Shown here piece after piece: positions 793 to 57,494 of a stretch of DNA of 64,000 nucleotides. Below the pieces are notes generated by a model. It made no database searches and had not been told where the DNA came from. It saw only the letters and a list, made by a program, of their open reading frames with translations. A program made the position numbers and the translations under genes. The stretch comes from Macrostomum lignano. Lineage: Eukaryota. Every line of letters begins with the position of its first letter. Positions within the stretch are counted from its first letter, which is position 1. The stretch is from the NCBI GenBank assembly GCA_002269645.1, contig NIVC01001402.1, positions 124,001 through 188,000 of the forward strand. Reading direction: 5' to 3'.

Positions 793-5918
<5,126 letters not shown>

Positions 5919-6007: not shown

Positions 6008-6019
6008 TTCCCTTCTCCG
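6008..6019 (+). repeat. Right target-site duplication TTCCCTTCTCCG
   Basis: Matches 1189-1200. Confidence 0.9.
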
Positions 6020-7149
6020 TGAGGCTCAGCATGCTGGTGAGCTGCTGGTTCGACTTCCTGCTCACGGCTGGCAAGTCTGTCACGCACCACCTGGCACCGA
6101 GCGTGATGGGCCACATATTGGGAGTTGAAGACTACCGTCGGCAGACCAGCATCGAAGTCTGCATTGTGTACTATCTTTTCACCATCTGGCTGCTGCACGG
6201 CAGCCCCTTCATCCGGCTGGGACTCTGCTTTCACTCCCTGTGCGCGACTCTGGCGCCGCTGAAGAGCGGCAATCTGCTGCGCAAGAGGAACGTCATTCTG
6301 TACCAGCTGCTGCTCATCGCGCTGGGTCTTCTACCCTGCGCCAAAGTCTTCAGCGCCGCTTGGAATTTCGAAAGAAACCGTTGCTACTTTCAAAAAGATT
6401 CGATCGACCAGTTCTACAGGACGTACACATTCTTCATTGGCAGGGTGGCGGTGTTCCTTCTGCTGCTCCTCACGCTAGCGGTCATTGTGGTTCATCTCAA
6501 CCGGAATGGGAAAGATCTCGGAGCCAATCGCCCGGACCAGACAGTGACGGTGTCCAAGATATTCATAACAACCAGTCTGATCTTCTTCATTTGCGAGGCT
6601 CCGTACACTATTCTGAGCTATCTGGAAAGCAGTGACAGCGTTCTGATCATTACGGACAATGCCGAAAAGCAGGCCAAAATTCTGCTGAACGCTCTAATGT
6701 ACTTCAATCCGGCACTCAACTGGGTTCCCTATTTGATTGGGAGAAAGTTTAGAAGGTTCTACAGGAACAATTTTCTGAGCAGAAAGCTCTTCAACAAGTC
6801 GAAGCCCAGCCCGACCAGCCAGTCGATGCCGAGTACCAATCTGAAGGTTTGAGCAGTGGTGACGTGGAAACTGCAGATTAATTTGGAATCTGCAGTGCTC
6901 TACTTTACAGAACTGACATTCATTGCTGTTGGTGACAAAGTTCAAATGTTAGCTGAGCTGCAGTTTCGATTTGAAACTTGCTGGTAATCCATCCTAACCC
7001 TATAAAATCGCCTAAACATGGCGGATAGGGTGATATAAATTGCCTCTGCAGTCTAATTTTTGCTCTACAGCTGTCTATTGATTGGATTTTCGTTTCTTTC
7101 TTTGTCCACCATCCTCACAGCTGCTACAGGCAGCGAGGTGGAGGAGCGC

Positions 7150-10472: not shown

Positions 10473-13400
10473 ATGGACCAGCCACATGAAGATGCGTTGT
10501 CAGCAGCCAGCGACAAAGAAAATCCGAGGCTGCTGCACGTTGCCGCCCGAACGGGCCATGTGGAAGAGGCCAACCGGCTGATCGAGGCCGGGGCCAGGGT
10601 GAACCGGCGCAGCAGCTCCGGGATCACTCCGCTGTTTGCAGCCTGCCAGAACGGTCACCTTCGGCTGGTCAAGCTGTTGCTAAAAGTCCGGGCGGATTTG
10701 GACCTGCGACAGACAGCTATTGGGTCTTCGCCGCTGTACGTGGCCGCGCAGAATGGTCACTTTGAAGTGGTCGAGAAACTGATTTCTTCGGGCGCAGATG
10801 TTGATCTCCGAAGGAGGAGTGGCACCACTCCGCTTCTGATCGCCTGCGTGAACGGCCACTTAAAAGTTGTTCAAGCGCTGATTTCTGCAACGGCAGACAT
10901 CGCCCTGACCAGAAACGAGGACGAGACTCCACTGTTTGCTGCGGCCGACAAAGGGCGCGAGCCGGTAGTTCGAGAGCTCATCAAATCTGGCGTTGATGTA
11001 GATTTTCAACGCCGAACTGGAGAAACGGCACTTTCTATTGCCGCTGCCAACGGTCACGTGGATGTCGTGAAGACACTCGCTGCTTCTGGAGCCTCAGTAG
11101 ACCTCCAGACGATCTCCGGGGAGTCGCCGTTGTTCACTGCAGCGCTGAACGGTCATGTGAAAACAGTGGACTGTTTAATCAAGGCCGGTGCCGATGTCAA
11201 CCTTCAGAATCGGGACGGGTGGACGCCGATATTTGCTGCGACCGTGACCTCGCGACCAGCTGTAGTTGAGCTACTGATAGCCAGGGGCGCCAATGTTGAT
11301 GTGAAGACAGACTCAACAATCACTCTAATTCAAATCGCTCATCTGATTGGTTGCACTCAAACAGCTCAGCTACTGATGAGGCATGGATGTACGGAGGTCA
11401 AGGACACTTCAGCGACCAGCGGTTCCTTTGCGTTTTCTAATCATCTAGGGGAGCCGCCGGATCCAATCAGGTGAGCACATACAAAGCTGCTAAATTTATC
11501 ACCAACCCGTTAATCAACAATTTTCTTTTCAATTAAAACAGCGTGAGTGCTGAGCTGAGCGGACGGCTTAGAGAGGCTGGGTTCGTCAGCAAAATGGCTG
11601 CTGTGCAGGCCACCGTGGCGGACATCATGCAGGAAATTGAGCAGAAAAGAATGAAAAAGAGCGAAATATTTTTTGTCGGCAGCTTCTCTGAAGGTTGGGG
11701 CAACAGCCTGCGCCAGCTTGGAGGCAGAACTGACGCGGACTCCGACATTGACGTGACAGAGTTTGTCCCTGGCAGACTGTGCCACATTCAAGGCAGGTGC
11801 CAGTGCAGTGGCAAAGGACTTGAGCTGATACCCTATCGAAACGGCCATGTGATTTACTCTGGTTCAGGTAAAATCAGTTCTATTAACTGCTATTCAGTTC
11901 CCGAATCGATCATTTTTAAAGGAAAAGTTCTTGAATCCCATCCCCTCTCGTACATTGCAATTCCAGGTGACAACCCGGCCATGCAGATGAAAGGGTCATT
12001 CTTGATGCCGGCATTCGATCTTGTTAGTGCATTCCAGTGCTGCAGCTACCCGTACATTGAAGCCATTGAAGGAAGTGCAACTGCTCAGCAATCGGCAGAT
12101 GCCAATCCTGCGGATCTACATGTCGGTAGCCAGCCAAAGAGGCCTGACCAGCAGAACAGTTCTTTACCCCCAAAACTGCGGGAGTCACTCAGGCAGCAGC
12201 TGCGCAATTCCTGCTGTCACTTAGTGACCACCGCACCTCCCGGTGAGTCTGGTAGGCAGCTCAGAGTGAGCACTACTTTCTTGGAGCGGCATCTCATGCG
12301 CAGCCTGACTGACACACAAGGTCAACTATTCATTGTGCTCAAGTATCTAATCAAAAAAGTGATTGCGCAAAACGTTAAGGGATTGAAGACGTACCATGCC
12401 AAATGCCTGCTGTTTTACATGCTGGAATCTGAGCCAGAGACGGAGTGGCGACCCGAAAACTTGGTCTTGCTGATTGAAAAGTCACTGCGGCGACTGGTGC
12501 GTGAGCTGAGTGAGTCGGAAGGACCCGGCTGCATGCGGCACTTCTTCCTGCGGGATGCAGTTGTGTACCTGAAGACTGGGAGTAGCAGCAAGCCCGACAT
12601 CGCGGTGGAGGTGGAAAGGACAATTAGCGACTTGATGAAGCACTTGTGCCGCTTTGTGGATCAGCTGAGACCTCTAGATGAGCAGAGGTTCTACATGCAT
12701 CCCTTCCTTAATATTCCATACCCCTGGTACAAATTCGAACCCAAGTCTGCGCAGTATGAATACTATGAACTCTACGATGCCATCCATAACATTGTGATGC
12801 AGATTTCGGGTTCTAGCGGAAGCTGCAGCCTGAAAGCTGTGCTCAACTGCATCGGAAGAGTTCCGGACTGCGCTCTAACAGCCAGAGAAACGCTCAGAGC
12901 ACTGGCCTGTTTGCTTTTTGAAAGGCATGCGGAAGCGAAAGCAGCATTGCAGTCAATGGTGAATCATCACGTAAGCCGCGGTGTTGACCTCAGCAGGCTT
13001 CAGCCGCAAATTCGGGAAACCGCGACTCAAATCGAAGCGGAAAAATTCGCGCAGAAGGTGCTTTGGCAGCAGCTCAAAGGAACCGATTCGGCCTGGAAGT
13101 TTTTCTTCCACCACCACCAGAGACCAGTGATCTACTCAAAGAAAGGGTTCCTCAGCGCCACCTTTCCTGTCGAGATGAACAACTACAACATGTTCCATTT
13201 TGTTAATTTTGACGCTCTTAGAAAGTGTCTCACGTTGGAGCTGAACGGCTCGAGTTCGAATCCGATGCTGGCGCAGAAGTGGTTCGACGATGTGACGGCC
13301 AGCAAGGATGCTGACGTACAGGAGCTGGCAATGGTGCTAAACTACTGCTCAGATCGCAAGCAGCTGGTGAAACTGATCCAGGCACATCACCGAACCATTT

Positions 13401-13504
13401 CGGAGCACCGACTGACACGGGACAAACTGGTACAGCTGATTTCCTCATCGGTGAGTCTGCGTGTTTACGAGCCAAAATATCCAGTGCTGTCCGCTAGGGG
13501 GTGA
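10473..13504 (+). CDS. Ankyrin-repeat (x9) plus Mab-21/cGAS-like nucleotidyltransferase fusion (cGLR-like), about 986 aa; exons 10473-11470 and 11542-13504
   Basis: Exon 1 has 9 ANK repeats (TPLxxAxxNGHxxVVxxLLxxGAxVD). The 71-nt intron AG|GTGAGC...TTTTCTTTTCAATTAAAACAG|C is phase 2 at both ends and joins the two ORFs in frame. Exon 2 has FVGSFSEG...SDIDV, FDLV, STTFLERHLM, LKYLIKK, LKTYHAKCLLF, HFF. A further donor (GTGAGT, 13451) could add a 3' exon. Confidence 0.88.
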
Positions 13505-14585: not shown

Positions 14586-16256
14586 TCAGATGCAACAGCC
14601 GCCACTGGCCGAGCCAACCAGCTCGACCCGGACCCGGCCGCTCGCCTCCGTGTTATTTGAATCGGCGCTCACGACGTTCTTGGCCTCCGCCGAAGCGTAG
14701 CTGCCTCCGCTGCCGCCACCCAGCGCGGAATCTCCGCCGACTCCGCCGCCCGAGTAGCCGCCGCCTCCACCACCGCCTCCCGCCGGGACACCGGGGCCGC
14801 TCCCCCCGCCTCCGCCCCCGCCGCCGAAGCCGCCGAATCCACCGAAACTGCTGCCGGCGCCGCCGCCGGCGCCGCCGAGCCAGTCGCTGCCAATGGTGCC
14901 GCCTTCGCCGCCGTCGCCACCGCTAGACGTGTCGCCGCCGTGCCAGCCTTTGGAGAGGCAGCCGGCGCCGCCGCCGCCCCGACCGCCCCTGGAAATTCCG
15001 CTGGGAGGCGGCGCCGGAGCTCCTGCGCCATCGATGCCGCCATCGCCTCGGGCAGCGCCAGTTGCTTCGGCGGCGGCGGTTCCGTTGCGGGAGTCGGTCC
15101 CACCGACACCAGCTGATGGACTCCCAGAGGCACTTGCTCCGCCGCAGCCGCCGCCGCCTCCGGCAGCCAACAGCAACTGGCTGGTCTCAAGCGGGCCCTG
15201 CTCCATGACGAAGCTTCCGCCTCCGCCTCCGCCCCCGCCGAGGCCATCGGAAGCCGCGTCTGCTCCGCCGCTGCCCACGACAATGCTGATGTTGGCCCCG
15301 GCGTTGAGTTCGAAGCAGCCCGAAATAAAGGCGCCGCGGCCGCCGGGAAAGCCGAAGCCGCTGCGGCCGCCGCTGCCGCCCCAGGCGGAGATTCGGCAGC
15401 AGAGGTGGCCCAAGTCTGGGGGCGGACGGTGCAGCTTCGCAGCGCCGGTTCTGGACACCAGGGGGGCTGTGAAGGTTGCCATGGTTCTAGATTCAGCCAA
15501 TAGTTTTATTACTAGATGCGAACCTTTAGTACCGGTATAATTTAAACATCGAGCCTATTTTCATGTCTAGACGAGTAGCAATAATTATTCCAAAGGATAA
15601 TGCAGGGACAAGATTTAAGTATAGAGCATTCAAGAGCTTGGCTTGTTCATTCAGCATCAGTCTGGGTCGTACGCGAGACTTACTTGCATTCTTGACTGAA
15701 GGTCTAACCTAAATTTGCACTTCATTGAGTTCTCAAAGAATTTCTGCCCCGGGCTGAACAAAATCCCCTAAAAAGTTATCCTGCCCTAAAAGTGCAGCGC
15801 TGAGCTTCTGAACGCAGTCTCACCTCGCTCGTCAAACAAAACGGAGCCGTCAGTTGGGCGCGGCGGCTCAGGCTCTCCGGAGGACCTGCCGCAGGCGGCT
15901 TCACGCAGACGGGCTTCGCTGACGAAGGTCAGGCAGTCGGCAGCGGCTGGAGGGAACTCGCGCCACTCAACGTCCAAGTCGCAGGCGGTGCCGAGCGCGC
16001 ACTTGACTTGGCTGCTGGTGAGGTTGGCGCCGGCCTGGCGCAGCTGGAAGACAGCGCAGCGGGCCTTGGCCGCGCACTTGCGCGAGCAGGCCAGCAGGTC
16101 GGCCGTGCTGGGGGCAGCAGCGTCCGCAGCCGCCTTTGGCGGGTACCGACAGAGCCGCGGTCGCTGGGCGAACTGCCAGACAGCCGTGGGTGTCGGGCCG
16201 GCCGAGGCGGCCGCGAAGAAGAAGAGGCAGTGAAGCGGCAGTGGCAAGAGGAGCAT
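14586..16256 (-). CDS. Secreted protein: signal peptide, PAN/apple-like domain, ALK/LTK-type glycine-rich domain; exons 16256-15824 and about 15523 (or 15511)-14586
   Basis: Signal peptide MLLLPLPLHCLFFFAAASA; PAN-like cysteine spacing CSRKC..RCAVF..KCAL. The donor GTGAGA at 15823 is phase 1 and matches acceptors at 15524 or 15512. Gly-rich signature SAWGGSGG..GGRGAFISGCFEL..ISIVVG..GGGGGGSFV..LLAAGGGGG..GGGYSGG..GGSY. Confidence 0.7.
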
Positions 16257-17109
16257 CTCGAGCTGCTAGGTTCTGCACAGCGGACAGTGCAGCCTTTTAT
16301 CTCCCTGAGAGCCGTTTCCATTGGCAACACGTGGAAATGTTTGCTCAACCTGGCGTGGGAAACTGCCGACTCATGGTTCGAGGGTAGAAATCCCGGGAAG
16401 AATATGTGCTGCATTCGCCTTGAGTTTGTATTGCCAAGGTGAAAGTTTTCAAGAAACCGTCAGTCAGTCTTATTGCGTGGCCCTTCTCAGTAAAAGTGGT
16501 ACACAATGAATTTTCAAGTGCCCAATTAAACCTTCAAGAGCCCCCTAGAATGCATAGGGTGCGAGCGCTACTGAATGGTTACAAAACGAATCAATTCAGC
16601 AGCAGAAATCTGGAAAGTCTCAAACTCTCATGCTAAAAACTGTTTTTGAAAAACACCGAGCTCTGCATCCCTGCGCATTTACGAGCGTGTTGCATAATTA
16701 ACGAGGTCCCTAGGAGGCTTTACGATATTTTCGATTTGATTCAGCTTAATTTCTTAAGCAGCAACCCACTGTTTAATTATTTCTGAGCTGCTTTCTCTCA
16801 AAACCGCGACGACCGGCTGCTTTGCAGTCTCTGTAAATACGGAGTCTGGGAATCGATTCAGCATCGATTGGGCAGTCAATGCGCGGGTTTCACTGAATAC
16901 TTTTCATCGCTTAAACAGTTAAGACACTTAATAAGTAGGTAGTTAAACACTTTTAAGTAGGTAGTGACGCACAAGCAATTCTGCAGACCCGCTCCGACGC
17001 ACTCACAGCGCTGTGCACAGCTGCATATTTTTTCTACCAGCTCCTCATTGGCGTAAGTCACACAAGTCCTAAGCCAGCATCCCGAGCATGACCCGCAAGT
17101 TTATATGGG

Positions 17110-17822
17110 ATCGAATCCGACAGCTTTGATGCAAGCTTTGGATGTGTAACCGCACTCTGGAATCGAATCCAATGGTGCAAGCTTTGGATGTGAAACCGCA
17201 CTCTGGAATCGAATCCAATAGCTTTGGTGCAAGCTTTGGATGTGAAACCGCACTCTGGAATCGAATCCAATAGCTTTGGTGCAAGCTTTGGATGTGAAAC
17301 CGCACTCTGGAATCGAGTCCAATAGCTTTGGTGCAAGCTTTGGATGTGAAACCGCACTCTGGAATCGAGTCCAACAGCTTTGGTGCAAGCTTTGGATGTG
17401 TAACCGCACTCTGGAATCGAATCCAACAGCTTTGGTGCAAGCTTTGGATGTGAAACCGCACTCTGGAATCGAGTCCAACAGCTTTGGTGCAAGCTTTGGA
17501 TGTGAAACCGCACTCTGGAATCGAGTCCAACAGCTTTGGTGCAAGCTTTTGATGTGAAACCGCACTCTGGAATCGAGTCCAACAGCTTTGGTGCAAGCTT
17601 TGGATGTGTAACCGCACTCTGGAATCGAATCCAGCAGCTTTGGTGCAAGCTTTGGATGTGTAACCGCACTCTGGAATCGAATCCAACAGCTTTGGTGCAA
17701 GCTTTGGATGTGTAACCGCACTCTGGAATCGAATCCAGCAGCTTTGGTGCAAGCTTTGGACGTGTAACCGCACTCTGGAATCGAGTCCAACAGCTTTGGT
17801 GCAAGCTTTGGATGTGTAACGC
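17110..17822. repeat. 52-bp minisatellite (GCTTTGGTGCAAGCTTTGGATGTGAAACCGCACTCTGGAATCGAGTCCAACA), about 14 copies
   Basis: Period measured 17221 to 17273; ends approximate. Confidence 0.95.
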
Positions 17823-19098: not shown

Positions 19099-20230
19099 AT
19101 ACCTGGCACCGAGGCCACATGATCAGCAGAGATACCTGGCACCGAGGCCACATGATCAGCAGAGATACCTGGCACCGAGGCCACATGATCAGCAGAGATA
19201 CCTGGCACCGAGGCCACATGATCAGCAGAGATACCTGGCACCGAGGCCACATGATCAGCAGAGATACCTGGCACCGAGGCCACATGATCAGCAGAGATAC
19301 CTGGCACCGAGGCCACATGATCAGCAGAGATACTTGGCACCGAGGCCACATGATCAGCAGAGATACCTGGCACCGAGGCCACATGATCAGCAGAGATACT
19401 TGGCACCGAGGCCACATGATCAGCAGAGATACCTGGCACCGAGGCCACATGATCAGCAGAGATACCTGGCACCGAGGCCACATGATCAGCAGAGATACCT
19501 GGCACCGAGGCCACATGATCAGCAGAGATACCTGGCACCGAGGCCACATGATCAGCAGAGATACCTGGCACCGAGGCCACATGATCAGCAGAGATACCTG
19601 GCACCGAGGCCACATGATCAGCAGAGATACCTGGCACCGAGGTCACATGATCAGCAGCTAGATACGAGTACTTGGCACCGAGGCCACATGATCAGCAGAG
19701 ATACTTGGCACCGAGGCCACATGATCAGCAGAGATACCTGGCACCGAGGCCACATGATCAGCAGAGATACTTGGCACCGAGGCCACATGATCAGCAGAGA
19801 TACTTGGCACCGAGGCCACATGATCAGCAGAGATACTTGGCACCGAGGCCACATGATCAGCAGAGATACCTGGCACCGAGGTCACATGATCAGCAGAGAT
19901 ACTTGGCACCGAGGTCACATGATCAGCAGAGATACCTGGCACCGAGGTCACATGATCAGCAGCTAGATACTTGGCACCGAGGCCACATGATCAGCAGAGA
20001 TACCTGGCACCGAGTCAGAGCTACCATGCTATTGCCACATGATCAGCAGAGATACCTGGCACCGAGTCAGAGCTACCATGCTATTGCCACATGATCAGCA
20101 GAGATACCTGGCACCGAGTCAGAGCTACCATGCTATTGCCACATGATCAGCAGAGATACCTGGCACCGAGTCAGAGCTACCATGCTATTGCCACATGATC
20201 AGCAGAGATACCTGGCACCGAGTCAGAGCT
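19099..20230. repeat. 33-bp minisatellite (TACCTGGCACCGAGGCCACATGATCAGCAGAGA), about 27 copies, switching to a related 52-bp unit after about 19990
   Basis: Period 19101 to 19134 = 33; period 20001 to 20053 = 52. Confidence 0.95.
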
Positions 20231-20456
20231 GCTAAGCTGCAGCTTGAACAGATCACTACGACTCACATATGTGACCAGCTTGTCTGTAGGGGGCTGCCTT
20301 ATCTTTGTTAGTTAAGCCACCTGTCACGAAATCTGTCAGCTTTCTGATGGTGATTGGCTTCCGGAGGTGCACTTGCCTGGAGGACAGCATCTTGCCGGAC
20401 AATTGCGTGAGTACCTTGGAATTAGGCTTTAAAATACTTCCAACCCTCAATTATGC

Positions 20457-21300
20457 AATCAGTGACTGTCTTGTGTGTGCACTGCACAGTAGCAGTAGGC
20501 AATCAGTGACTGTCTTGTGTGTGCACTGCACAGTATGCAATCAGTGACTGTCTTGTGTGTGCACTGCACAGTATGCAATCAGTGACTGTCTTGTGTGTGC
20601 ACTGCACAGTAGGCAATCAGTGACTCTTGTGTGTGCACTGCACAGTAGGCAATCAGTGACTGTCTTGTGTGTGCACTGCACAGTAGGCATTCAGTGACTG
20701 TCTTGTGTGTGCACTGCACAGTAGCAGTAGGCAATCAGTGACTGTCTTGTGTGTGCACTGCACAGTAGGCAATCAGTGACTGTCTTGTGTGTGCACTGCA
20801 CAGTAGGCATTCAGTGACTGTCGTGTGTGTGCACTGCACAGTAGCAGTAGGCAATCAGTGACTGTCTTGTGTGTGCACTGCACAGTAGGCAATCAGTGAC
20901 TGTCTTGTGTGTGCACTGCACAGTAGGCATTCAGTGACTGTCGTGTGTGTGCACTGCACAGTAGGCATTCAGTGACTGTCGTGTGTGTGCACTGCACAGT
21001 AGGCATTCAGTGACTGTCTTGTGTGTGCACTGCACAGTAGCAGTAGGCATTCAGTGACTGTCTTGTGTGTGCACTGCACAGTATGCAATCAGTGACTGTC
21101 TTGTGTGTGCACTGCACAGTAGCAGTATGCATTCAGTGACTGTCTTGTGTGTGCACTGCACAGTAGGCAATCAGTGAGTGTCTTGTGTGTGCACTGCACA
21201 GTAGCAGTATGCAATCAGTGACTGTCTTGTGTGTGCACTGCACAGTAGCAGTATGCAATCAGTGACTGTCTTGTGTGTGCACTGCACAGTAGCAGTAGGC
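20457..21300. repeat. 38/44-bp minisatellite (AATCAGTGACTGTCTTGTGTGTGCACTGCACAGTAGGC, with or without AGTAGC)
   Basis: Period 20511 to 20549 = 38; some units carry a 6-bp insert. Confidence 0.95.
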
Positions 21301-22122
21301 AGCCGATGGGAATTACATGTAGCCCCAGTTCCCTTTGCAGACACTGTTGGCTTTCTGTCATGCCAAATTCAGGAGAGCTGTAACAGGCACTGTTGCAGTG
21401 CTGGCTCGAGAAGGCAAGGCAAACAGACAGGTGGCTCATATTGCGCAGGTGCTAAATTAGCCATGTAAAAGCAACCCAACAGCAAAATCCTCAGCGCCAG
21501 GAACTCAGCTCGCTATTGTCTCTAGAATTTTCCTGGCCTGCCAGCTGCCATCAGCTCCTTACCTGCACCCCATGCTATTCAGGCCTAATTGGCAGTCTGA
21601 ATTCACTGTCTCTCCATCATTGACAGTCTGCCTGGAAACAGGCCTCAATAAAAATATTCTCAACTTTCATATCAGTTCCTGTGCTGATGTGTCATAAATC
21701 CCGTCAGTCATTTTCGTAGGCCAGTTGATGTCACTTCATCTCCCTGCTTACTGGCTTGGGGATTAGGCTCATAAGCTCGAAACTCTAAATCTGCGATCGA
21801 GGTTGGCTGAATGGGAATATCATCTACTAAGATAAAAGACGTTTGATGTTAATCTCCAGTCTTCAATGAGATGTAGAGACGTCCAGAGTCTGTCTACCTT
21901 TCAGGAGGGATGACTTGAAAGGACGACAAAGGCATTCGTTATCTTGCCAGACCCATTCAGAGCCTCCCAGCCAATCAGCGACATCCGCCAGGCCATTGGA
22001 TGCCCCCTAACCCACTCGTTCTCTTGTCCCTTTCATTTGGAAAATTCGGCCGCGCATCAATCGGGAGAAGCTCAGCCGAATCGTGTCTCAGGATCCCAGC
22101 CTCCCATCATCGCCACATCAGC

Positions 22123-25100
22123 ATGGCCTGCATGCCGAAGGAGCCGCCGCTGTCCCCGCAGCCTCTGCTCAACCGCTCGCTGTCGCTCTGGTCGGCCAAC
22201 GCCACAGCGGATGCGGAGTCCCTGTCCGTGTACGAGATTGTCCTCTACGCAATCCTGGCTGCCGCGGCCAGCGCCGTCACCGGCTTCGGCAACCTGCTGG
22301 TCCTCGTTTCCTTCCGCATCGACCCGCAGCTGCGCTCCGTCAGCAACTACTTCCTCATGTCGCTGGCGGTGGCGGATCTGCTCATCGGCTTTGTTTCCAT
22401 GCCAACGTACACGGTGTACCTGCTCGTCAACTACTGGCCCTTCGGTGTTGTGGCCTGCAACCTGTACCTCTGCTTTGACTACACCATGTGCAACGCCTCC
22501 GTGGCCAGCCTGCTCATCATCTCCATCGACCGCTACCGCTCCGTCACCAGCCCGCTGGTCTACCGCGCGCACCGGACGCCCCGCCGAGCGCTGATCATGA
22601 TCGCCTGCGCCTGGGCCGTGTCTATCGTGCTCTGGAGCCCTCTGATTGTGCTCTCCTCCGTCACCAAAACCGACCGACTGGCCACTGTCTGCCAGGTGGA
22701 GTTCATCAACGACAATCCTTACCTGACCTTCTTCACCTCGATCATGGCGTTCTTCCTGCCCGTCACCGTCATGACCGTGCTGTACGTGCGCATCTTCCAG
22801 GAGACAAAGCGGCGACAACGCGAGTTGAAGAACCTCCAGGCCGGCGGTAGCAGCCGCAGCGGTGCCGGCAGCATCGAGTCACCGGGCTCCTCCGTCCGTC
22901 GAGGCCGACGCCGGGGTCGCCACCGCAGACGCGACCTGCACAGCTGCCTCGGTCGCATTGTTGACAAGGACGACGAGAACGGAGTCGCCGGGGAGGACGA
23001 AGGCGAATCAGACTCGCTCGGTCGCGACGGCCACCTGCTGAAGCGGGACGGCAGCCTGACGCTGAGGGAGGATCGGCCTGTGCTGACGCGGCACTTTCCC
23101 CGCTCCAGCTCCTACTTCCGGGCCAACTACCAGGCCGGCAGGCGCGGCAGGCCCGCCGAATCATCGCTGGCTCCGTCGACTGCCACGGATGATTTGAGTG
23201 AGTTGAGATCAGATTTTTGATACCACTGCGAGTTACCACTTTTAGGTTCGACTGAAATACCCTTGCAGAACAAATTATCAGCAAAATTTCGCCAATACAC
23301 AATGTTTTCACTTTTGGAATTGTTGTGCGTGGGAGGAGATTAAAAAGGTTTGCAAACGCAGTGTCAACCGAGTGTCAACCAGTGCCATTTCACCGCGAAA
23401 AGTCCCACGGTCACGCGACTGGTCGACGAGATGCCCCAGAATAAAACTTGGGGATTGAAAAGGGAATTCTCCCTTTGAATTTACAGCTGATGCGTTTATT
23501 CCTTCCTGGTTGCGATAGTGCCTGCTTAATCCGTCCGATGCCTACTGCGTCCCTCTTGATTTTTAAGCCTCAAGCCCGCCTCCTGTGTCGGATTGCGCAT
23601 CAACAGTCGCTCAGCGCCTCATCAATTTGCGCTTCTCTCTTGAGCTGCCATCCAAATTTGGTGAAGCTCTGGCTATTTGTTTCGCAATAGGCAGCTGCGA
23701 AACTGCTGCTGCTATGGTGGAAGATTCTGCAGGCTGGACTTTTGTCAGCTAAACTTCCCCATTGGTCCAAAAGAATCCCCGCTAATCGATGCGTGTTGCC
23801 TCCTAAGACAGGCACGAGGGCGCGCGCGAAGCGGGCAGGTGTGAATTGCGACACTGAGCAACTGCAGCTCCCTTCCTGCAGCATTGACGGGGCCCCCTCC
23901 CGGGGCATTCATTCGACACTGCCTCTTCTATCCCCAACGTACCGGAGAACGTTGCTTCCATTTAAGCAACGCGCCGTCTTTAGTGAAGAGTTGTAGCCAC
24001 AGGTATCGAGTCTAACTGATGGAACTACCACATGTCAGGACACACGCCTGATGGCAAGTGGACGATGCAATTATGCAATTATTATAGAAATACGCTCATA
24101 GAAGTCATTTTTGATTAACGAGCGCAAATCAGCTTGAAAAAGCAAGAATTCACAGCCTCAAGCCAGGGTGTGCGGAGCAGGCGCAGGTGAGAAGTACTGT
24201 GTATCAGCGGAAGAAGATTGCTGCTGTAGGACGGTGCGCCCCGCCAACACAAAGAGGCAAAGTGGACAGAGCGGTGCAGACGGGGTCGCTGAGAAGAATT
24301 ATGAATTATTAACAGTGTGCAAGCAGACCGCGCTAAGCAGAGGCTCGGGCCAGGTGAATTTCATTGGGGGAGAGCTTTCATGTCTCTCGGTAGCGGCTGG
24401 TGGGAAATGATGAGAAGCCCTCGGAAAAACTCAGCCTGGATCCGCAGATCAGAGCCACCGCGGTGGGGCTTGCTCGGGGCGGTTTCACGAATTGCACGAT
24501 GTTCCAGAAAGGCGCTTCCCTCAAAATGCACCCCTGCCTCTACAAAACTTCGCAGACGCCTTGCCCGACGACCTGGTCTCCGAGCTGCCGGAGGATCAGC
24601 CCAGCTACATCGTGTGGATCCGGCTGCCGGACGCCAGCGGCCGCGGCCGCGTGCAGCTGCGCTCCAAGCGCTTCTCGGACGCAGCCGCGGAGCCGCAGTT
24701 TCTCAAGCAGCCGGCGCAGTCGCAGCTGCACCAGCCAGCCGCGGCGGCATCCGCGGGCCGATTCGACAGCGCCAAGTCAAACGCCACGGCTGACAGCGGC
24801 ATCGATAGCATCGGGGAGGGCTCGAGTCTGCGGAGAGCCGGCCAACAGCAGCCAAATCGCAACAACCAAAGACGAGTCTCTGAAGTTCAGAAGCACAGCA
24901 AGAAGGAGTCCAAGAATGAGCAGAAGGCGGCGAAGACACTGAGCGCCATTCTGCTGGTGTTCATCATCACGTGGATTCCCTACAGCGTGTTCACCCTGAT
25001 CCGGGCGGTGTACCGCGCGCACTGCCCCGACGAGCTCTACCGCCCGCTGATTCCGCACACTCTCTACAACTTCGGTGAGACTCCGGAGAGGGTGCTTGGG

Positions 25101-27234
25101 TCGACGAATTCTGAGAGGAAAGCAGAGGTCTGCTCAAAGCAAATCTCTTACGAAGAGCTGCTCAATCAGATGCCAGGAGTAGCACTCAAAATGCCCCTCG
25201 AGATGACCTTCCGCAAGATTGCCTGCCTGCTAGCTTTGTTGCTCCGAGTTGCTTGAAGTGTGGGCGGGCTGGGCCGAGGGGAGCAGCGGGAATGGCGCGA
25301 TGAACTCACGCGGGGGGTGACAGATGCGGCTCGGCAGTGCGGAGTCACAGCTGCGTCTTCGGCGGGAAGGGCAACACCTGCAGCGCCTCACACAGCGGTC
25401 CTGGGCCTCCCCAGCTCTGGCCCTCAACTCTCATCTCCCTTAGGCTTCACTTATCGTACAGCCAGAGAATGGCAAGTGCAATCAAGCCCCAGAACAGAGA
25501 AGCATCTAAACCTAACCATGGAATGCAGAGGGAAAGCCAGACAAATTGGGTTTGCCAGCGCCCGAAGTTCAGACTAGCAATAGAGGTTTTTTAGGCAACA
25601 TTGCAGTTTGATTCGCGATAATTTTTTCGGGTTTAATTAAATCCTTGCCTACGCGTCACGTTGGGGTTTGAATTCGTGCCAAATCGTCAACCCGCGTCAA
25701 TTGTCTATGGCCAAACCAAAGGAAAATGTTAAAATAAGGAAGATTATTAACAATCTAAATGGCTACTAAAGTTTTGTTCGGCTTTGGACTTTGGATTTTT
25801 CCCCGGGTCACTGCTCGGACTATATGGCCACTGGCAGGAGGTTCGGCCTCTTTAAGCTGCTTCTGCCGCTGGGACCTCCATAAATTTATCAAATTTTCCG
25901 CTACGCCAGGCCTCGGAAAAGTTTGAGGAGATCCTGCAGGCGGACCAGGCGAGATAGCGGGGGGGGGGTAGGAACGAGAGGGGCGCCCACTCACCCTGAT
26001 TAATCAGGTATTTCTTATCTCCGTCAATTATCTGCCATAATAATGCAAATTTCTGAGCCGTTCATCATGGCTGCAATTCAATGGTCTCGGGGCCGCGCGG
26101 GCAGGGGGAATTGCGAATGAATTCAAGCAGGAAACGGCGGCAATCGATAAAAATATGGAGAGAAACTCAGACTGGCCCCGGCCTGCCGATCAAGAAGTTC
26201 CTTGAGGCTGCTGCTCAGCCTGAGAACTCCGTCTCAAAATATAGAGGGCGATTTTTAAGATTAAAGCTATTCTTCGCATTCATTTCAACAGAATTTCAAT
26301 GGAACTGCATTTTTATCAACTCTTTCCTTGACCCAATAGGATGAACGAAACTTACTGGCTCTGCTACCTCAACTCTACCATGAACCCCTGTACCCGCAGG
26401 CTACTGGCTCTGTTACCTGAACTCTACCATGAACCCCTGTACCCGCAGGCTACTGGCTCTGCTACCTGAACTCTACCATGAACCCCTGTACCCGCAGGCT
26501 ACTGGCTCTGCTACCTGAACTTTACCATGAACCCCTGTACCCGCAGGCTACTGGCTCTGCTACCTGAACTCTACCATGAACCCCTGTACCCGCAGGCTAC
26601 TGGCTCTGTTACCTGAACTCTACCATGAACCCCTGTACCCGCAGGCTACTGGCTCTGCTACCTGAACTCTACCATGAACCCCTGTACCCGCAGGCTACTG
26701 GCTCTGTTACCTGAACTCTACCATGAACCCCTGTACCCGCAGGCTACTGGCTCTGCTACCTGAACTCTACCATGAACCCCTGTACCCGCAGGCTACTGGC
26801 TCTGTTACCTGAACTCTACCATGAACCCCTGTACCCGCAGGCTACTGGCTCTGCTACCTGAACTTTACCATGAACCCCTGTACCCGCAGGCTACTGGCTC
26901 TGCTACCTGAACTCTACCATGAACCCCTGTACCCGCAGGCTACTGGCTCTGCTACCTGAACTCTACCATGAACCCCTGTACCCGCAGGCTACTGGCTCTG
27001 TTACCTGAACTCTACCATGAACCCCTGTACCCGCAGGCTACTGGCTCTGTTACCTGAACTCTACCATGAACCCCTGTACCCGCAGGCTACTGGCTCTGCT
27101 ACCTGAACTCTACCATGAACCCGGTCTGCTACGCGCTGTGCAACGTAAATTTTCGACGCACTTTCTGGAAAATTCTCACCTGCCGGTTTCGAAGGCGCCG
27201 CACGCTGCGGCAGCTGGGACACGGTGAGCGATGA
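22123..27234 (+). CDS. mAChR: Muscarinic acetylcholine receptor (A-type/Gq-like); exons 22123-23197, 24508 (or 24556)-25074, 27086-27234
   Basis: TM1 GNLLVLVSF; TM2 SLAVADL; TM3 [17 protein letters not shown]; TM5 [12 protein letters not shown]; i3 loop SYIVWIRLP; TM6 [20 protein letters not shown]; TM7 [20 protein letters not shown]. Donors GTGAGT (23198) and GTGAGA (25075), both phase 1 and frame-compatible with the acceptors. Confidence 0.93.
26351..27120 (+). repeat. 49-bp minisatellite spanning the last intron/exon junction of the muscarinic receptor (15 acceptor copies)
   Basis: Unit = GCTACTGGCTCTGCTACCTGAACTCTACCATGAACCC (exon start) + CTGTACCCGCAG (intron end). AG ends at 26399 + 49n, up to 27085. 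Confidence 0.95.
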
Positions 27235-27334
27235 AGCGCTTCTGCTCTGCATTACTGTTCTCCTTTGCTCTGCGATTAAAGTCCATTCTGTCAAATCAGA
27301 GCTGCAAGGTGTCATTTCAGAGACTGGGTTAGGG

Positions 27335-27885
27335 ATTGGGGCCATAGAGAGATGCAGGTGAGGGATTGGGGCCATAGAAAGATGCATGTGAGGGATTGGG
27401 GCCATACAGAGGGGCAGGTGAGGGATTGGGCCATAGAGAGGTGCAGGTGAGGGATTGGGCCATAGAGAGGTGCAGGTGAGGGATTGGGCCCATAGATTAT
27501 GGCAGGTGAGGGATTGGGCCATAGAGAGGGGCAGGTGAGAGATTGGGCCATAGAGAGGTGCAGGTGAGGGATTGGGCCCATAGAGAGGGGCAGGTGAGGG
27601 ATTGGGCCATAGAGAGGGGCAGGTGAGGGATTGGGCCATAGAGAGGGGCAGGTGAGGGATTGGGGCCATAGAGAGGGGCAGGTGAGAGATTGGGGCCATA
27701 GGGAGGGGCAGGTGAGGGATTGGGGCCATAGAGAGGGGCAGGTGAGAGATTGGGGCCATAGAGAGATGCAGATGAGGGATCGGGGCCATAGAGAGGGGCA
27801 GGTGAGGGGTTGGGGCCATAGAGAGGGGCAGGTGAGGGATTGGGGCCATAGAGAGATGCAGATGAAGGATTGGGCCATAGAGAGA
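27335..27885. repeat. 29-30-bp minisatellite (GGCCATAGAGAGGGGCAGGTGAGGGATTGG)
   Basis: Visible tandem array; ends approximate. Confidence 0.93.
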
Positions 27886-28871
27886 AGTACAGATGCCAAT
27901 CTAGGGGCAGTAAGTGATATCTGCCTGAGCCTGAGTAATATGAGTCTCCAGATCTAGCATTGCCCCTCAGACCTGCAGACCCCCAGAGCAGCAGCAGCAG
28001 CATCTAATGCAATCAGTGTGCTGTACTGATTGCAGCTGCACCGCTGCCACGCGGCACTATTGAGCTGCCTGCTCCGAAGTGGAGGAAAATCGCAGTCAGA
28101 GCCGGCGCCCTATGGGCGGAGGGCACTCGAGCAGGCAATAAGCTGGCGCGCCGGCAGCAGAAATCAATTATCATAGAGCCGGTAGCAGCGGCAAAACTTG
28201 TCCCATGCCTCAGTCTGCGCAGGAAAGTGCAGCAGGGCAGCACAATGGACAGCATCGGGGCGGGAGTCGCAGAGGTGGCAGTGCTGGGCGATCGGTAGCG
28301 ATATGCGCCTTTCAGCCCAATTATTCTGAAAACTGGCGGCTGAATCCGCGACATCCTGGCGCACTTTCAGGGGGGGGGGCGGATTGCCGAGATAAGGCGG
28401 GGCTGCGAGGTCCCGGGGACAAGCCCCAGCTGCGCTCCGTCCCACAGCCGCCCCCGCTGGAGCTCCCAGCCGGCCCGCGCAGCCTCTGCGCTTCATCACT
28501 CTGGCGGGGAGCCACGGGAAATTGACGGGCCTGAGAGAGGGAAAGCGACCGAGGAAAACTGGGAGGCTGTGCGCCGCGCCTGGAGGCTGGGCGCACTCCG
28601 CCGCATCAGACGGAATTCTCGCATCAATTCCCGTGAATTCCGTCGGGCTCCCCGTCTTGGACCCGCGCGTCTCCCGATGCCCCCGAATGAACTGCATTGT
28701 TGAAACTGGGAATTCTCTTGGACTTGCTAATGGGGGAAAATTGCTGGGAAGGAAGAATTTTCTGGACTTTCCAGTCAGCTCTAAGCATAAGTGGCAACTC
28801 TTTAGGGTTTTTTGGTCGGACAGAAATGGAATTATTGCAACGCATGGCTGTAAAAGGTGGCACAAGTGCAG

Positions 28872-29738
28872 ATGTGGGTCACACAGAGATAAGAGGTACG
28901 GGAGTGGGTCACACAGAGATAAGAGGTACGGGAGTGGGTCACACAGAGATAAGAGGTACGGGAGTGGGTCACATATAGAGATAAGAGGTACGGGAGTGGG
29001 TCACACAGAGATAAGAGGTACGGGAGTGGGTCACACAGAGATAAGAGGTACGGGAGTGGGTCACATACAGATAAGTGGTACGGGAGTGGGTCACACAGAG
29101 ATAAGAGGTACGGGAGTGGGTCGCACAGAGATAAGAGGTACGGGAGTGGGTCACACAGAGATAAGGGGTACGGGAGTGGGTCACATACAGATAAGAGGTA
29201 CGGGAGTGGGTCACACAGAGATAAGGGGTACGGGAGTGGGTCACATACAGATAAGAGGTACGGGAGTGGGTCACACAGAGATAAGAGGTACGGGAGTGGG
29301 TCACATATAGAGATAAGAGGTACGGGAGTGGGTCACATATAGAGATAAGAGGTACGGGAGTGGGTCACACAGAGATAAGAGGTACGGGAGTGGGTCACAT
29401 ACAGATAAGAGGTACGGGAGTGGGTCACATACAGATAAGAGGTACGGGAGTGGGTCACACAGAGATAAGAGGTACGGGAGTGGGTCACACAGAGATAAGA
29501 GGTACGGGAGTGGGTCACACAGAGATAAGAGGTACGGGAGTGGGTCACACATAGAGATAAGGGGTACGGGAGTGGGTCACACAGAGATAAGAGGTACGGG
29601 AGTGGGTCACACAGAGATAAGAGGTACGGGAGTGGGTCACATATAGAGATAAGAGGTACGGGAGTGGGTCACACAGAGATAAGGGGTACGGGAGTGGGTC
29701 ACATATAGAGATAAGAGATACGGGAGTGGGTCACACAG
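28872..29738. repeat. 30-bp minisatellite (GTGGGTCACACAGAGATAAGAGGTACGGGA)
   Basis: Visible tandem array with occasional 2-bp inserts. Confidence 0.95.
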
Positions 29739-39834: not shown

Positions 39835-39899
<65 letters not shown>

Positions 39900-39988
39900 G
39901 GCAGGCACTCTGGCAGGCAGACAGACAGACAGAAAGACAGACAGAAACTAAGACACTAAGACAGAGATAGACAGACAGGCAGACAGGC

Positions 39989-40037
<49 letters not shown>

Positions 40038-40128
40038 CTAAGACAGAGATAGACAGACAGACAGACACTAAGACACTAAGACAGAGATAGACAGACAGGC
40101 AGGCAGACAGACAGACAGACAGGCAGGC

Positions 40129-40168
<40 letters not shown>

Positions 40169-40218
40169 TGACAGACAGACACTAAGACACTAAGACAGAG
40201 ATAGACAGACAGGCAGGC

Positions 40219-40285
<67 letters not shown>

Positions 40286-40414
40286 AAGACAGAAAAACAT
40301 ACAGACACACAGACAGACAGACAGACAGACAGAGAGACAGACAAGCATACAGACACACAGACAGACAGACAGACAGAGAGACAGACAAGCATACAGACAG
40401 ACACACAGACACTA

Positions 40415-40459
<45 letters not shown>

Positions 40460-52522: not shown

Positions 52523-52757
52523 TGCAGTGCATGTGAGGGGAACTCAGGGGCCATATCAGCTGGTCTCCTCGCTGGCTGCGTGACGGGCTTGGGCGTTGAT
52601 TTGCGGCAGAGCAAACTGCAAATTGTTAACCACGAGCACGCACGCAATCCTCAATCCAATCTTCAATCCGCAATCCTAGCGGTCTCGTAACTGCAGACTA
52701 ACTACGAGCGCTGTAAACCCAACCGCCCGCAGTTCAACAACAGCGGACTTCGCCCCC

Positions 52758-53483
52758 ATGCCGGAGCAAAGCAACGACTACCGAGTGGCTGTCTTCGGCT
52801 CCGCCGGCGTCGGCAAGTCCTCGCTGGTGCAGCGCTTCATCAAGGGCACCTTCAAAGAGGCCTACACGCCCACCGTTGAGGACACGTATCGGCAGGTCAT
52901 CACCAATGACAAGCAGGTGTGCACGTTGCAGATCACGGACACAACTGGATCGCACCAATTCCCAGCAATGATGCGGCTCAGCATGAGCAAAGGCCACGCC
53001 TTCATCCTGGTGTACTCAGTGACCTCGCGGTCCAGCCTGGTCGAGCTAAACACTATTGTGAACGAGATCAAGGAGATCAAGGGCCCGGATATCGCTAAGA
53101 TCCCCATGATGCTCGTAGCCAACAAGTGCGACGAGGCGGCCAGGGAGGTCGGCAAGGAGACGGGGGCCGCCATCGCCAACAAGTGGGGCTGCGGCTTCAT
53201 CGAGACTTCCGCAAAGGAGAACGTGAATGTCACGGAGCTGTTCGCCCAGCTGCTGCAGATGGACAAGGAGCGCAACATGGCGCTGGTTGGAGACAAGAAG
53301 AAGAAGGGCAAGGCGGACAAGAAGGCGGAGAAGGCGGACAAGAAGGCGGAGAAAGCAGACAAGACAGACAAAACGGACAAGACGGACAAGGCGGGAACCT
53401 CCGGCGCGAGTGCAGGCGCATCAGGAGCGGCGGGTGCGGAAGCTGCCGAAGGTGCAGCGGGGAAGAAGTGCGGCCTGATGTAG
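52758..53483 (+). CDS. DIRAS: DIRAS-family (Di-Ras1/2) small GTPase, intronless, 241 aa, C-terminal CAAX (CGLM)
   Basis: [68 protein letters not shown] and ETSAK are the characteristic DIRAS1/2 sequence. Confidence 0.95.
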
Positions 53484-57169: not shown

Positions 57170-57494
57170 GTCACCTGAGAAATATGAGTTACCGAATCTG
57201 GCAAACCATTAACCACTGATATTTATTCTATGCCGATGACTTGCTTGCTAGCTTGATGAGCCTCAGTATCCAATGTATTCGATGTGCCTTCGTTGTTGGT
57301 GAAGAAAAAGCTTGCAGCTGGAAACCACTGCAGAAAACTGAAGTATTGTGACTCAAGCTTTTCAAATTGGAGCTGATCGATAACGATTCTATTTGTTGTA
57401 CAGATGCGGATAGATATAGATGATTTATAGCTGTGGATAAACTATTTTCAGCTATAAATAGATTTATATTTACAGGTGTGAATAAGTGAAATAC

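What the first reader, a model, noticed from the sequence alone, without database searches (positions are those of the whole stretch)
10473..13504. Ankyrin-repeat cGAS-like receptor (ANK9-Mab21 fusion) with intact catalytic triad: candidate protein-sensing immune second-messenger synthase
Seen: the two ORFs listed separately (10473-11474, 11543-13504) are joined by a clean 71-nt GT-AG intron (11471-11541, phase 2 at both ends) into one protein of about 986 aa. It has 9 ankyrin repeats, then an NTase core with the G-S motif (11678-11683), D-I-D (11744 and 11750) and a third acid in F-D-L-V (12017), then a Mab-21 helical lobe (KYLIKK, LKTYHAKCLL, HFF) and a long C-terminal helical extension. Established: cGAS, cGLRs and CD-NTases use exactly this GS + (D/E)h(D/E) + D triad (human cGAS E225/D227/D319) to make cyclic dinucleotides, and the characterised animal cGLRs are triggered by nucleic acids. 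Inference: an N-terminal ankyrin solenoid points to activation or autoinhibition by a protein ligand, i.e. a different input to cGAS-type signalling in a lineage where this pathway is poorly characterised. No STING-like partner is visible in this window.
Basis: partly seen in the sequence, partly recalled or inferred. Interest (0 to 1): 0.85.

Follow-up and report, generated by a model that had tools for sequence, protein, structure and literature searches.

The report
Flatworm ankyrin-repeat cGAS-like receptor gene
This is an intact, apparently unannotated gene of the flatworm Macrostomum lignano for a cGAS-like enzyme fused to nine ankyrin repeats; it belongs to a large flatworm-specific family that has been catalogued and partly screened, but whose trigger and product are still unknown.

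Summary
ORFs 10473-11474 and 11543-13504 are joined by a 71-nt GT-AG intron. A second, in-frame 99-nt intron (11868-11966) was missed, so the product is 953 aa, not 986.

The protein has three parts:
- nine ankyrin repeats;
- a cGAS/Mab21-fold nucleotidyltransferase, whose GS, D-I-D and third Asp are invariant in 15 non-redundant paralogues;
- an orphan C-terminal domain of about 300 aa.

AlphaFold2 (pLDDT 87.5) plus Foldseek put cGAS, MAB21L1 and Sp-cGLR1 on top.

The window is Macrostomum lignano contig NIVC01001402.1. The gene belongs to a lineage-specific family (81 clusters at E<=1e-30), mostly with 2-17 N-terminal ankyrin repeats and a few fused to a caspase.

The architecture is not new. 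Li et al. 2023 list ANK-cGLR fusions, including M. lignano proteins. They cloned five M. lignano NTase constructs for a dsDNA/dsRNA screen, and none is among their 15 selected active enzymes.

The enzyme reading is well supported. The "protein-sensing" reading is untested inference.

Verdict: a new, apparently unannotated member of a known kind. Interest is moderate to low.

The parts
10473..11470 (+). Exon 1. It starts at ATG 10473 and encodes nine ankyrin repeats (aa 18-310, about nt 10524-11402) plus the start of the linker.
   Evidence: ORF list. An in-frame stop at 10443 lies upstream of the first ATG. Pfam Ank, Ank_2 and Ank_4 give E=1e-48 to 1e-55. The N-terminus is colinear with paralogue PAA65593.1.
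11471..11541 (+). Intron 1: 71 nt, GTGAGC...AACAG, phase 2, in the linker between the ankyrin array and the NTase.
   Evidence: Joining 11470 to 11542 keeps the frame. GC is 32%. Paralogue P0004 has a phase-2 intron in the same linker. The conserved residues ELSGRLREAGF lie upstream of the first Met of ORF 2, so ORF 2 cannot be a separate gene.
11542..11867 (+). Exon 2: the first half of the NTase N-lobe. It holds the spine helix, G379-S380 (11678-11683), a conserved extended GS loop (GWGNSLxxLxGRT), and D401-I-D403 (11744-11752).
   Evidence: Translation. S48, G52, W53, S68, D69 and D71 are invariant in 15 paralogues. In the AF2 model, strand 43-46 is followed by GS and a short helix, and D69 and D71 lie on strand 69-75.
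11868..11966 (+). Intron 2: 99 nt, GTAAAA...TTCCAG, phase 1.
   Evidence: It encodes a 33-aa insertion absent from the paralogues. GC is 37%. P0004 has an intron at the same column and phase.
11967..12574 (+). Exon 3, first part: the rest of the NTase core. It holds the third catalytic Asp D459 (12017-12019), a low-confidence acidic/polar loop, and the Mab21 C-lobe (LRVSTTFLER, KYLIKK, KTYHAK, HFF). Pfam Mab-21_C covers nt 12326-12559.
   Evidence: D127 is invariant. Pfam hit. HMMER aligns RVSTTFLER and YHAK with the cGAS motifs RLSFSHTEK and YHVK. Foldseek matches cGAS.
12575..13504 (+). Exon 3, second part: a family-specific C-terminal domain (aa 646-953), mostly helical with a small sheet, ending at stop TGA 13502-13504.
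   Evidence: It is conserved across paralogues. AF2 gives pLDDT 78.6 for the domain alone and pTM 0.88 together with the core. There is no Pfam, PDB-sequence or Foldseek match; the best Foldseek E-value is 0.27.

Best explanation
Window 10473-13504 is a three-exon gene of Macrostomum lignano (contig NIVC01001402.1). It encodes a 953-aa cytosolic protein with three modules:
- a nine-repeat ankyrin solenoid;
- a cGAS-like receptor (cGLR/Mab21) nucleotidyltransferase with a complete active site (G379-S380, D401, D403, D459);
- a C-terminal helical domain of about 300 aa found only in this family.

It is one paralogue of a large lineage-specific ANK-cGLR expansion.

Most likely mechanism (inferred, not shown): the enzyme rests inactive. 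An unidentified ligand or partner, recognised through the fast-diverging ankyrin array and/or the C-terminal domain, re-orders the conserved extended GS activation loop. The core then condenses NTPs into a nucleotide second messenger, which acts on a still unidentified receptor.

Shown here: the gene structure, the fold, family membership, conservation of the catalytic residues, and the modular pattern of divergence.

Inferred: catalytic activity, ligand dependence, the nature of the ligand, and an immune role.

The confidence of 0.55 refers to the mechanism. That the gene is an ANK-cGLR family member is about 0.95.
For: Gene model:
- ORFs and intron 1.
- Intron 2 rests on homologue gaps, GC content and an intron conserved in position and phase.
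- Single-polypeptide ANK+Mab21 models exist in many M. lignano paralogues.

Organism: window 12000-40416 is 100% identical to NIVC01001402.1.

Fold:
- AF2 gives pLDDT 87.5 and pTM 0.88.
- Foldseek's best hits are cGAS, MAB21L1 and Sp-cGLR1, all at probability 1.00 with target-normalised TM-score 0.46-0.56.
- Pfam Mab-21_C scores above its cut-off.
- hhalign against cGLRs screened by Li et al. gives 98.8% probability, E=6e-17.

Active site:
- S48, D69, D71 and D127 are invariant in 15 non-redundant paralogues, as are R209, S211, E216, Y252 and K255 of the acceptor pocket.
- These C-lobe motifs align with the cGAS motifs RLSFSxxEK and YHVK.

Family size: 81 clusters (at 50% identity) score E<=1e-30.

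Modular divergence:
- Against the closest full-length paralogue, the core is 58% identical, the ankyrin array 36% and the C-terminal domain 37.5%.
- Ankyrin copy number ranges from 2 to 17. This is the pattern of a conserved enzyme with variable recognition modules.

Link to immunity or cell death: paralogues PAA59752.1 and PAA93319.1 carry a caspase domain.
Against: - There is no transcript evidence for this paralogue. No gene is called at window 12000-13504 in the NCBI record, and neither product model is in the protein collection.
- Five ANK-less M. lignano family constructs were screened with poly I:C and dsDNA. None is marked among the 15 active cGLRs in Li et al. Table S3.
- The Pfam N-lobe Mab-21 model does not hit.
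- hhalign does not place D-I-D on the cGLR (D/E)h(D/E) column, because of a family-specific loop insertion of about 10 aa.
- Spatial clustering of the three acids could not be measured, because no coordinates were available.
- Li et al. state that most platyhelminths lack immune cGLRs.
- No STING partner was identified.
Confidence: 0.55

Rival explanations
1. Non-enzymatic scaffold. The Mab21 domain signals through protein-protein contacts, for example by activating a kinase or a caspase, without making a nucleotide. The ankyrin repeats are simply the interaction platform.
For: Shrimp Mab21 proteins bind neither dsDNA nor dsRNA and make no cGAMP, yet they activate IKK-epsilon directly (PMC12928593). 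The M. lignano constructs are not among the active enzymes of the Li et al. screen.
Against: GS, D-I-D, the third Asp and the acceptor-pocket residues are invariant across paralogues that otherwise share only 28-58% identity. That is hard to explain without selection on catalysis. The developmental MAB21L proteins, by contrast, lack a predicted functional active site.
Confidence: 0.15
2. An active nucleotidyltransferase with different chemistry or wiring. It might make linear 2'-5' oligonucleotides as OAS does, or another nucleotide signal. The ankyrin array would bind a nucleotide rather than a protein, as the nine ankyrin repeats of RNase L bind 2-5A.
For: OAS and cGAS share this fold (own knowledge). 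In some paralogues the ankyrin repeats lie between the cGLR and a caspase domain, which fits a cis relay. Li et al. report that most flatworms lack cGLR-STING.
Against: Foldseek ranks cGAS, MAB21L1 and cGLR entries in all 50 rows listed, with no OAS entry among them. There is no evidence that these ankyrin repeats bind nucleotides. The RNase L parallel comes from memory and was not tested.
Confidence: 0.15
3. A silent or decaying paralogue: a recently duplicated family member that is not expressed.
For: No gene is called at this position in the NCBI record's gene list. The exact product is absent from the protein collection. A LINE element lies about 4.5 kb upstream.
Against: All three exons are open over 2,862 nt. 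Both introns keep canonical splice sites. The protein retains all 34 columns that are invariant in the family core. The N- and C-termini are colinear with the annotated paralogue.
Confidence: 0.1
4. Two separate genes: an ankyrin protein and a Mab21 protein.
For: There is an in-frame TGA at 11472-11474 if the intron is not removed.
Against: ORF 2 has no ATG before the conserved block ELSGRLREAGF. The splice is clean and phase-matched. The same linker intron and fused products occur in the paralogues.
Confidence: 0.03

Closest known systems
ANK-cGLR fusions of Macrostomum lignano, catalogued by Li et al. 2023 (e.g. PAA68676.1, PAA86972.1, PAA45980.1). The nearest annotated paralogue is PAA65593.1 (BOX15_Mlig024325g2, 933 aa).
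   Same: Same species and same architecture: an N-terminal ankyrin array, the NTase-Mab21 core and the family C-terminal domain. They share the motif GSxxEGWGNSL...SDIDV...PAxD...LRVSTTFLER...KTYHAK...HFF and the same two intron positions.
   Different: Identity is only 28-58%: the core is 58% identical to the nearest paralogue, the ankyrin array 36% and the C-terminal domain 37.5%. This copy seems to have no gene model in the NCBI record.
Characterised animal cGLRs and cGAS (human and mouse cGAS; Sp-cGLR1, PDB 8GJY; Cv-cGLR1; Drosophila cGLR1)
   Same: The bilobal Mab21/cGAS fold; GS, two acids and a third acid; and the C-lobe nucleotide-pocket motifs.
   Different: There is an insertion of about 10 aa in the GS loop, and no vertebrate-type N-terminal tail. 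An ankyrin array and an orphan domain of about 300 aa are appended. Ligand and product are unknown. Sequence identity in the Foldseek alignments is 10-21%.
MAB21L1/2/3 developmental proteins
   Same: The same fold. MAB21L1 (5EOM, 5EOG) is among the top Foldseek hits.
   Different: According to Li et al., the MAB21L proteins lack a predicted functional active site. This family keeps it invariant. MAB21L proteins are single-domain.
RNase L with OAS (from own knowledge; a lead, not a test)
   Same: Nine ankyrin repeats combined with signalling by a cGAS-fold NTase.
   Different: In RNase L the ankyrin repeats sit on the effector and bind the messenger. Here they sit on the synthase. No homology beyond generic ankyrin repeats was tested.

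Membership tests
cGAS-like receptors (cGLR / Mab21-domain CD-NTases) | Bilobal cGAS/Mab21 nucleotidyltransferase fold | tested here: met
   The AF2 model has pLDDT 87.5 and pTM 0.88. All 50 Foldseek PDB rows listed are cGAS, MAB21L1 or Sp-cGLR1, at probability 1.00, E=2.6e-7 to 3.5e-5 and target-normalised TM-score 0.46-0.56.
cGAS-like receptors (cGLR / Mab21-domain CD-NTases) | Sequence-profile membership (Pfam Mab-21 / Mab-21_C) | tested here: met
   Mab-21_C scores 30.8-31.9 bits against a cut-off of 24.1. hhalign against screened cGLRs gives 98.8% probability, E=6e-17. The N-lobe Pfam model Mab-21 does not hit.
cGAS-like receptors (cGLR / Mab21-domain CD-NTases) | Active-site signature hG[GS] ... 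[DE]h[DE] ... [DE] | tested here: met
   G379-S380, D401-I-D403 and D459 are present and invariant in 15 non-redundant paralogues. They lie on the expected strands of the AF2 secondary structure. hhalign matches the GS and third-Asp columns. The DxD pair is offset by a loop insertion and matches only when a gap is allowed.
cGAS-like receptors (cGLR / Mab21-domain CD-NTases) | The three acidic residues cluster in space around the metal site | not testable with these tools
   Model coordinates are not exposed, so only the secondary-structure position could be checked.
cGAS-like receptors (cGLR / Mab21-domain CD-NTases) | Ligand-dependent synthesis of a cyclic nucleotide second messenger | not testable with these tools
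   This needs biochemistry. Related ANK-less M. lignano constructs are not marked active in Li et al. Table S3.
cGAS-like receptors (cGLR / Mab21-domain CD-NTases) | A cognate receptor (STING or other) in the same genome | not tested
   No STING domain was found in the 20 largest other ORFs of the window.
ANK-cGLR fusion architecture (Li et al. 2023, Fig 1C, Table S2) | Ankyrin repeats and the cGLR core in one polypeptide | tested here: met
   A phase-matched GT-AG intron joins the ORFs. Conserved residues precede the first Met of ORF 2. Fused paralogue models share the same linker intron. RNA evidence for this copy is lacking.
MAB21L1/2/3 (non-immune developmental Mab21) | Single-domain protein without a functional active site | tested here: not met
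   The active-site residues are intact and invariant, and the protein has three modules.

The most novel reading that the evidence does not exclude
The Macrostomum ANK-cGLR family is a STING-independent signalling system. In this reading the ankyrin arrays bind the nucleotide product rather than proteins, as RNase L binds 2-5A. The cGLR-CTD-ANK-caspase paralogues would then be self-contained sensor-messenger-executioner proteins. The orphan C-terminal domain would be the true ligand sensor.
Probability: 0.08. Interest if true: 0.8.

Novelty: new member of a known kind. Interest (0 to 1): 0.35.

Why it matters
cGLRs are a major family of animal pattern-recognition receptors, but every known trigger is a double-stranded nucleic acid, and many cGLRs are orphans. 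A clade with dozens of paralogues, an invariant active site and highly variable ankyrin arrays is a natural place to look for a non-nucleic-acid input. Some members carry caspase domains, and the host is a tractable, transgenic flatworm. Flatworms are also otherwise thought to have largely lost the pathway, so this clade could reveal a new output as well. This particular gene adds a corrected gene model and one more, seemingly unannotated, member. It does not add a new principle.

Tried and rejected
- **Other copies in the window.** tblastn of the product against the window found no second copy and no extra ankyrin exons.
- **Relatives outside Macrostomum.** Word-indexed searches returned only M. 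lignano proteins plus three short environmental contigs. One of these is labelled as a Kangiellaceae MAG and is probably eukaryotic contamination.
- **Identifying the C-terminal domain.** A separate AF2 model with Foldseek PDB, Pfam at E<=10 and PDB phmmer all gave nothing significant.
- **A third intron.** I considered whether the 24-aa insertion SATAQQ...PDQQ (about 12075-12150) is an intron. I rejected it: the stretch is GC-rich with no good splice sites, and AF2 models it as a low-confidence loop.
- **An alternative 3' donor.** A GGTGAGT at about 13451 was not pursued, because the C-terminus is colinear with the paralogues.
- **Isoelectric point as a hint of nucleic-acid binding.** The core has pI 8.5, which is uninformative.
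- **Exhaustive Pfam scan for STING.** I abandoned a scan of all window ORFs as too costly. Only the 20 largest ORFs were scanned.
- **M. lignano in Li et al. Table S5.** The species was not found in the held supplementary text.
Full report
**1. Observation**

The stretch 11471-11541 is 71 nt long. It begins GTGAGC, ends AACAG, and has 32% GC against 52-56% in the flanking coding sequence. Removing it joins the frames in phase 2.

The stated codons are correct:
- GGC AGC (G-S) at 11678-11683;
- GAC ATT GAC (D-I-D) at 11744-11752;
- GAT, the D of A-F-D-L, at 12017-12019.

Pfam finds ankyrin repeats at E=3e-55 and Mab-21_C at 30.8 bits, above its curated cut-off of 24.1. By eye there are eight canonical repeats plus a ninth capping repeat. 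None of this can be chance.

**2. Correction to the gene model**

Aligned with 38 homologues, the window protein has a 33-aa insertion, KISSINCYSVPESIIFKGKVLESHPLSYIAIPG, that almost all homologues lack. The DNA encoding it, 11868-11966, starts GTAAAA and ends TTCCAG. It is 99 nt long, so it stays in frame, and by chance it has no stop codon. Its GC content is 37%.

I mapped the M. lignano paralogue BOX15_Mlig031899g1 (P0004) onto its genomic locus. It has exactly two introns:
- a phase-2 intron in the ANK/NTase linker;
- a phase-1 intron at HVKIPGY|A|SSPATP.

The second is at the same alignment column and the same phase as the proposed window intron (HVIYSGS|G|DNPAMQ). The nearest full-length paralogue, PAA65593.1, also lacks the insertion.

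The gene therefore has three exons: 10473-11470, 11542-11867 and 11967-13504. The product is 953 aa.

The one-gene reading is further supported by the conserved block ELSGRLREAGF. It is present in all paralogues and lies upstream of the first Met of ORF 2.

**3. Source**

A GPCR ORF in the window (22000-23217) is 99-100% identical to M. lignano BOX15_Mlig007592g1. Window 12000-40416 is 100% identical to GCA_002269645.1 contig NIVC01001402.1, positions 136000-164416. The window is therefore Macrostomum lignano, a free-living flatworm.

The gene list for that stretch shows no called gene over window 12000-13504. Neither the 953-aa nor the 986-aa product is present in the protein collection. This paralogue therefore appears to be unannotated, and I have no transcript evidence for it.

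**4. What the protein is**

I modelled the 621 aa that follow the ankyrin array with AlphaFold2, using the paralogue alignment. The model has mean pLDDT 87.5 and pTM 0.88.

Foldseek against the PDB lists only cGAS, MAB21L1 and Sp-cGLR1 (8GJY) in its 50 rows. All have probability 1.00, E-values from 2.6e-7 to 3.5e-5, and target-normalised TM-scores of 0.46-0.56.

A profile of 15 non-redundant family cores matches mouse and human cGAS chains in the PDB at E of about 1e-5. The match runs through the C-lobe motifs, LRVSTTFLER against RLSFSHTEK and KTYHAK against SYHVKT.

hhalign against seven cGLR-like proteins that Li et al. cloned gives 98.8% probability, E=6e-17, over 266 columns. The GS and third-Asp columns coincide. 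The D-I-D pair is displaced there, because this family has about 10 extra, well conserved residues in the GS loop (GWGNSLxxLxGRT). With affine gaps, SDID aligns with the SDMD and SDAD of scallop cGLR-like proteins.

In the model's secondary structure, GS follows strand 43-46, D69 and D71 open strand 69-75, and D127 sits on strand 125-134. This is the Pol-beta NTase topology.

Across the 15 paralogues, the following are invariant: S48, G52, W53, S68, D69, D71, D127, R209, S211, E216, Y252 and K255. Adding 332 gives full-length numbering: S380, D401, D403, D459.

I could not measure the distances between the three acids, because coordinates are not exposed.

**5. The C-terminal domain**

Residues 646-953 are conserved across the family. 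The domain folds confidently, with pLDDT 78.6 alone and pTM 0.88 together with the core. It is a helical domain with a small sheet.

It has no significant match anywhere:
- Foldseek PDB: best E=0.27, to TPR-like proteins;
- Pfam at E<=10;
- PDB sequences.

It is an orphan domain, and its role is unknown.

**6. The family**

A filter-free profile search of 1.84 billion representatives finds 81 clusters at E<=1e-30, 225 at E<=1e-10 and 1,307 at E<=1e-3. Scores fall steeply after the first roughly 80-95 proteins, to the E=1e-13 to 1e-15 range of other cGLR-like proteins.

Every close hit that carries a name is M. lignano.

At least 53 members have two or more N-terminal ankyrin repeats, and the copy number ranges from 2 to 17. 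Some members are tandem cGLR-cGLR proteins (P0057, P0017).

PAA59752.1 (with PAA80948.1 in the same 90% cluster) and PAA93319.1 have the order cGLR core, C-terminal domain, ankyrin repeats, caspase. Pfam Peptidase_C14 hits the two scanned proteins at E=3e-25 to 3e-27.

Against the closest full-length paralogue, the core is 58% identical, the ankyrin array 36% and the C-terminal domain 37.5%. The pattern is a conserved enzyme flanked by fast-diverging modules.

**7. How it most likely works**

The invariant active site in paralogues that are otherwise 28-58% identical argues for selection on catalysis. By analogy with characterised cGLRs, the enzyme is probably held inactive until a ligand re-orders the GS loop. 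It would then make a nucleotide messenger.

The ankyrin array and/or the orphan C-terminal domain are the candidate input or regulatory modules. The caspase-fused paralogues hint at a defence or cell-death context.

All of this is inference. I put about 0.55 on "ligand-regulated nucleotide-messenger synthase" and much less, about 0.2-0.25, on the ligand being a protein recognised by the ankyrin repeats.

The rivals are:
- a non-enzymatic scaffold, as reported for shrimp Mab21 proteins (PMC12928593);
- a different product or wiring, of the OAS/RNase L type;
- a silent paralogue;
- two separate genes, which is effectively excluded.

**8. Comparison with what is known**

Li et al. 2023 (bioRxiv 10.1101/2023.02.22.529553, PMC9980059) surveyed about 3,000 cGLRs. 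Their findings relevant here are:
- 87% are stand-alone enzymes, and some are fused to TPR or ankyrin repeats or occur in tandem.
- Their domain table lists M. lignano accessions with Ank_2 hits: PAA68676.1, PAA86972.1, PAA45980.1, PAA58690.1, PAA67649.1 and PAA68216.1.
- Their Table S3 shows five M. lignano constructs (entries 89-93) that begin at the NTase domain. These were cloned for the TLC screen with poly I:C and ISD45 dsDNA.
- The column that names the 15 selected active enzymes is blank for these five.

No paper in the library characterises an ANK-cGLR, and none mentions a cGLR-caspase fusion.

The architecture is therefore catalogued but functionally unexplored. The window gene is a new, apparently unannotated member of it.

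**9. Verdict**

Novelty class: new member of a known kind. Interest: about 0.35.

The family as a whole remains a worthwhile experimental target, especially the orphan C-terminal domain, the variable ankyrin arrays and the caspase fusions.

Noticed in passing
Related M. lignano proteins P0102 (PAA59752.1), P0206 (PAA80948.1) and P0106 (PAA93319.1): These paralogues of the same cGLR family have the order cGLR core, family C-terminal domain, ankyrin repeats, caspase. Pfam Peptidase_C14 hits P0102 and P0106 at E=3e-25 to 3e-27, and both retain the SHG and QxCR catalytic motifs. P0206 shares a 90% cluster with P0102 and was not scanned. I found no paper describing a cGLR-caspase fusion.
   Followed up: partly
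window 12575-13501 (aa 646-953): This conserved C-terminal domain of about 300 aa has no match in Pfam, PDB sequences or Foldseek PDB, although the AlphaFold model is confident. It is an orphan domain that appears rigidly packed on the Mab21 core (pTM 0.88 for core plus domain).
   Followed up: yes
window 11783-11950 and 12038-12043 (H414, C419, C421, H435, C466, C467 in 953-aa numbering): His and Cys positions in the N-lobe are conserved in the family. H82 is found in 14 of 15 paralogues, H103 and C135 in all 15, and C87, C89 and C134 in 8-10 of 15. They may form a structural metal site different from the cGAS zinc thumb. The geometry could not be checked.
   Followed up: no
window 823-5918 (+): An apparently intact non-LTR (LINE) retrotransposon. 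ORF1 is 823-2100. ORF2 is 2100-5918 and carries endonuclease, reverse transcriptase and RNase H domains. It lies about 4.5 kb upstream of the gene.
   Followed up: partly
window 17106-17820, 19099-20230, 20455-21000: Three satellite-like tandem arrays lie between the cGLR gene and the GPCR gene. Their periods are 52 bp (14 copies), 33 bp (27 copies, running into a 52-bp variant), and 38 or 120 bp.
   Followed up: partly
window 22000-30416 (+), 33929-40416 (-), 52680-53480 (+), 59249-60319 (-), 6019-6849 (+): Neighbouring genes, in that order: a muscarinic-type GPCR (BOX15_Mlig007592g1), a DEAD-box SPB4-like helicase, a Ras-family GTPase, a TALE (Homeobox_KN) homeobox gene, and a 7TM receptor fragment. 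None is an obvious immune partner. No STING domain was seen in the ORFs scanned.
   Followed up: partly
Proteins P0002 and P0006 (JGI metagenome contigs of about 1.7 kb) and P0043 (contig labelled as a Kangiellaceae bacterium MAG): Short environmental contigs encode C-lobe and C-terminal-domain fragments that are 46-49% identical overall to the window protein, and 65-68% identical in the core region. They probably come from related meiofaunal flatworms. The one in a bacterial MAG looks like eukaryotic contamination.
   Followed up: no
window 14589-15554 (-) and 56000-64000: There is a Gly-rich low-complexity ORF of 322 aa with no Pfam hit, just downstream of the gene. Further along is a long stretch of short peptide-like tandem repeats with strong GC skew (0.17-0.46).
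   Followed up: no
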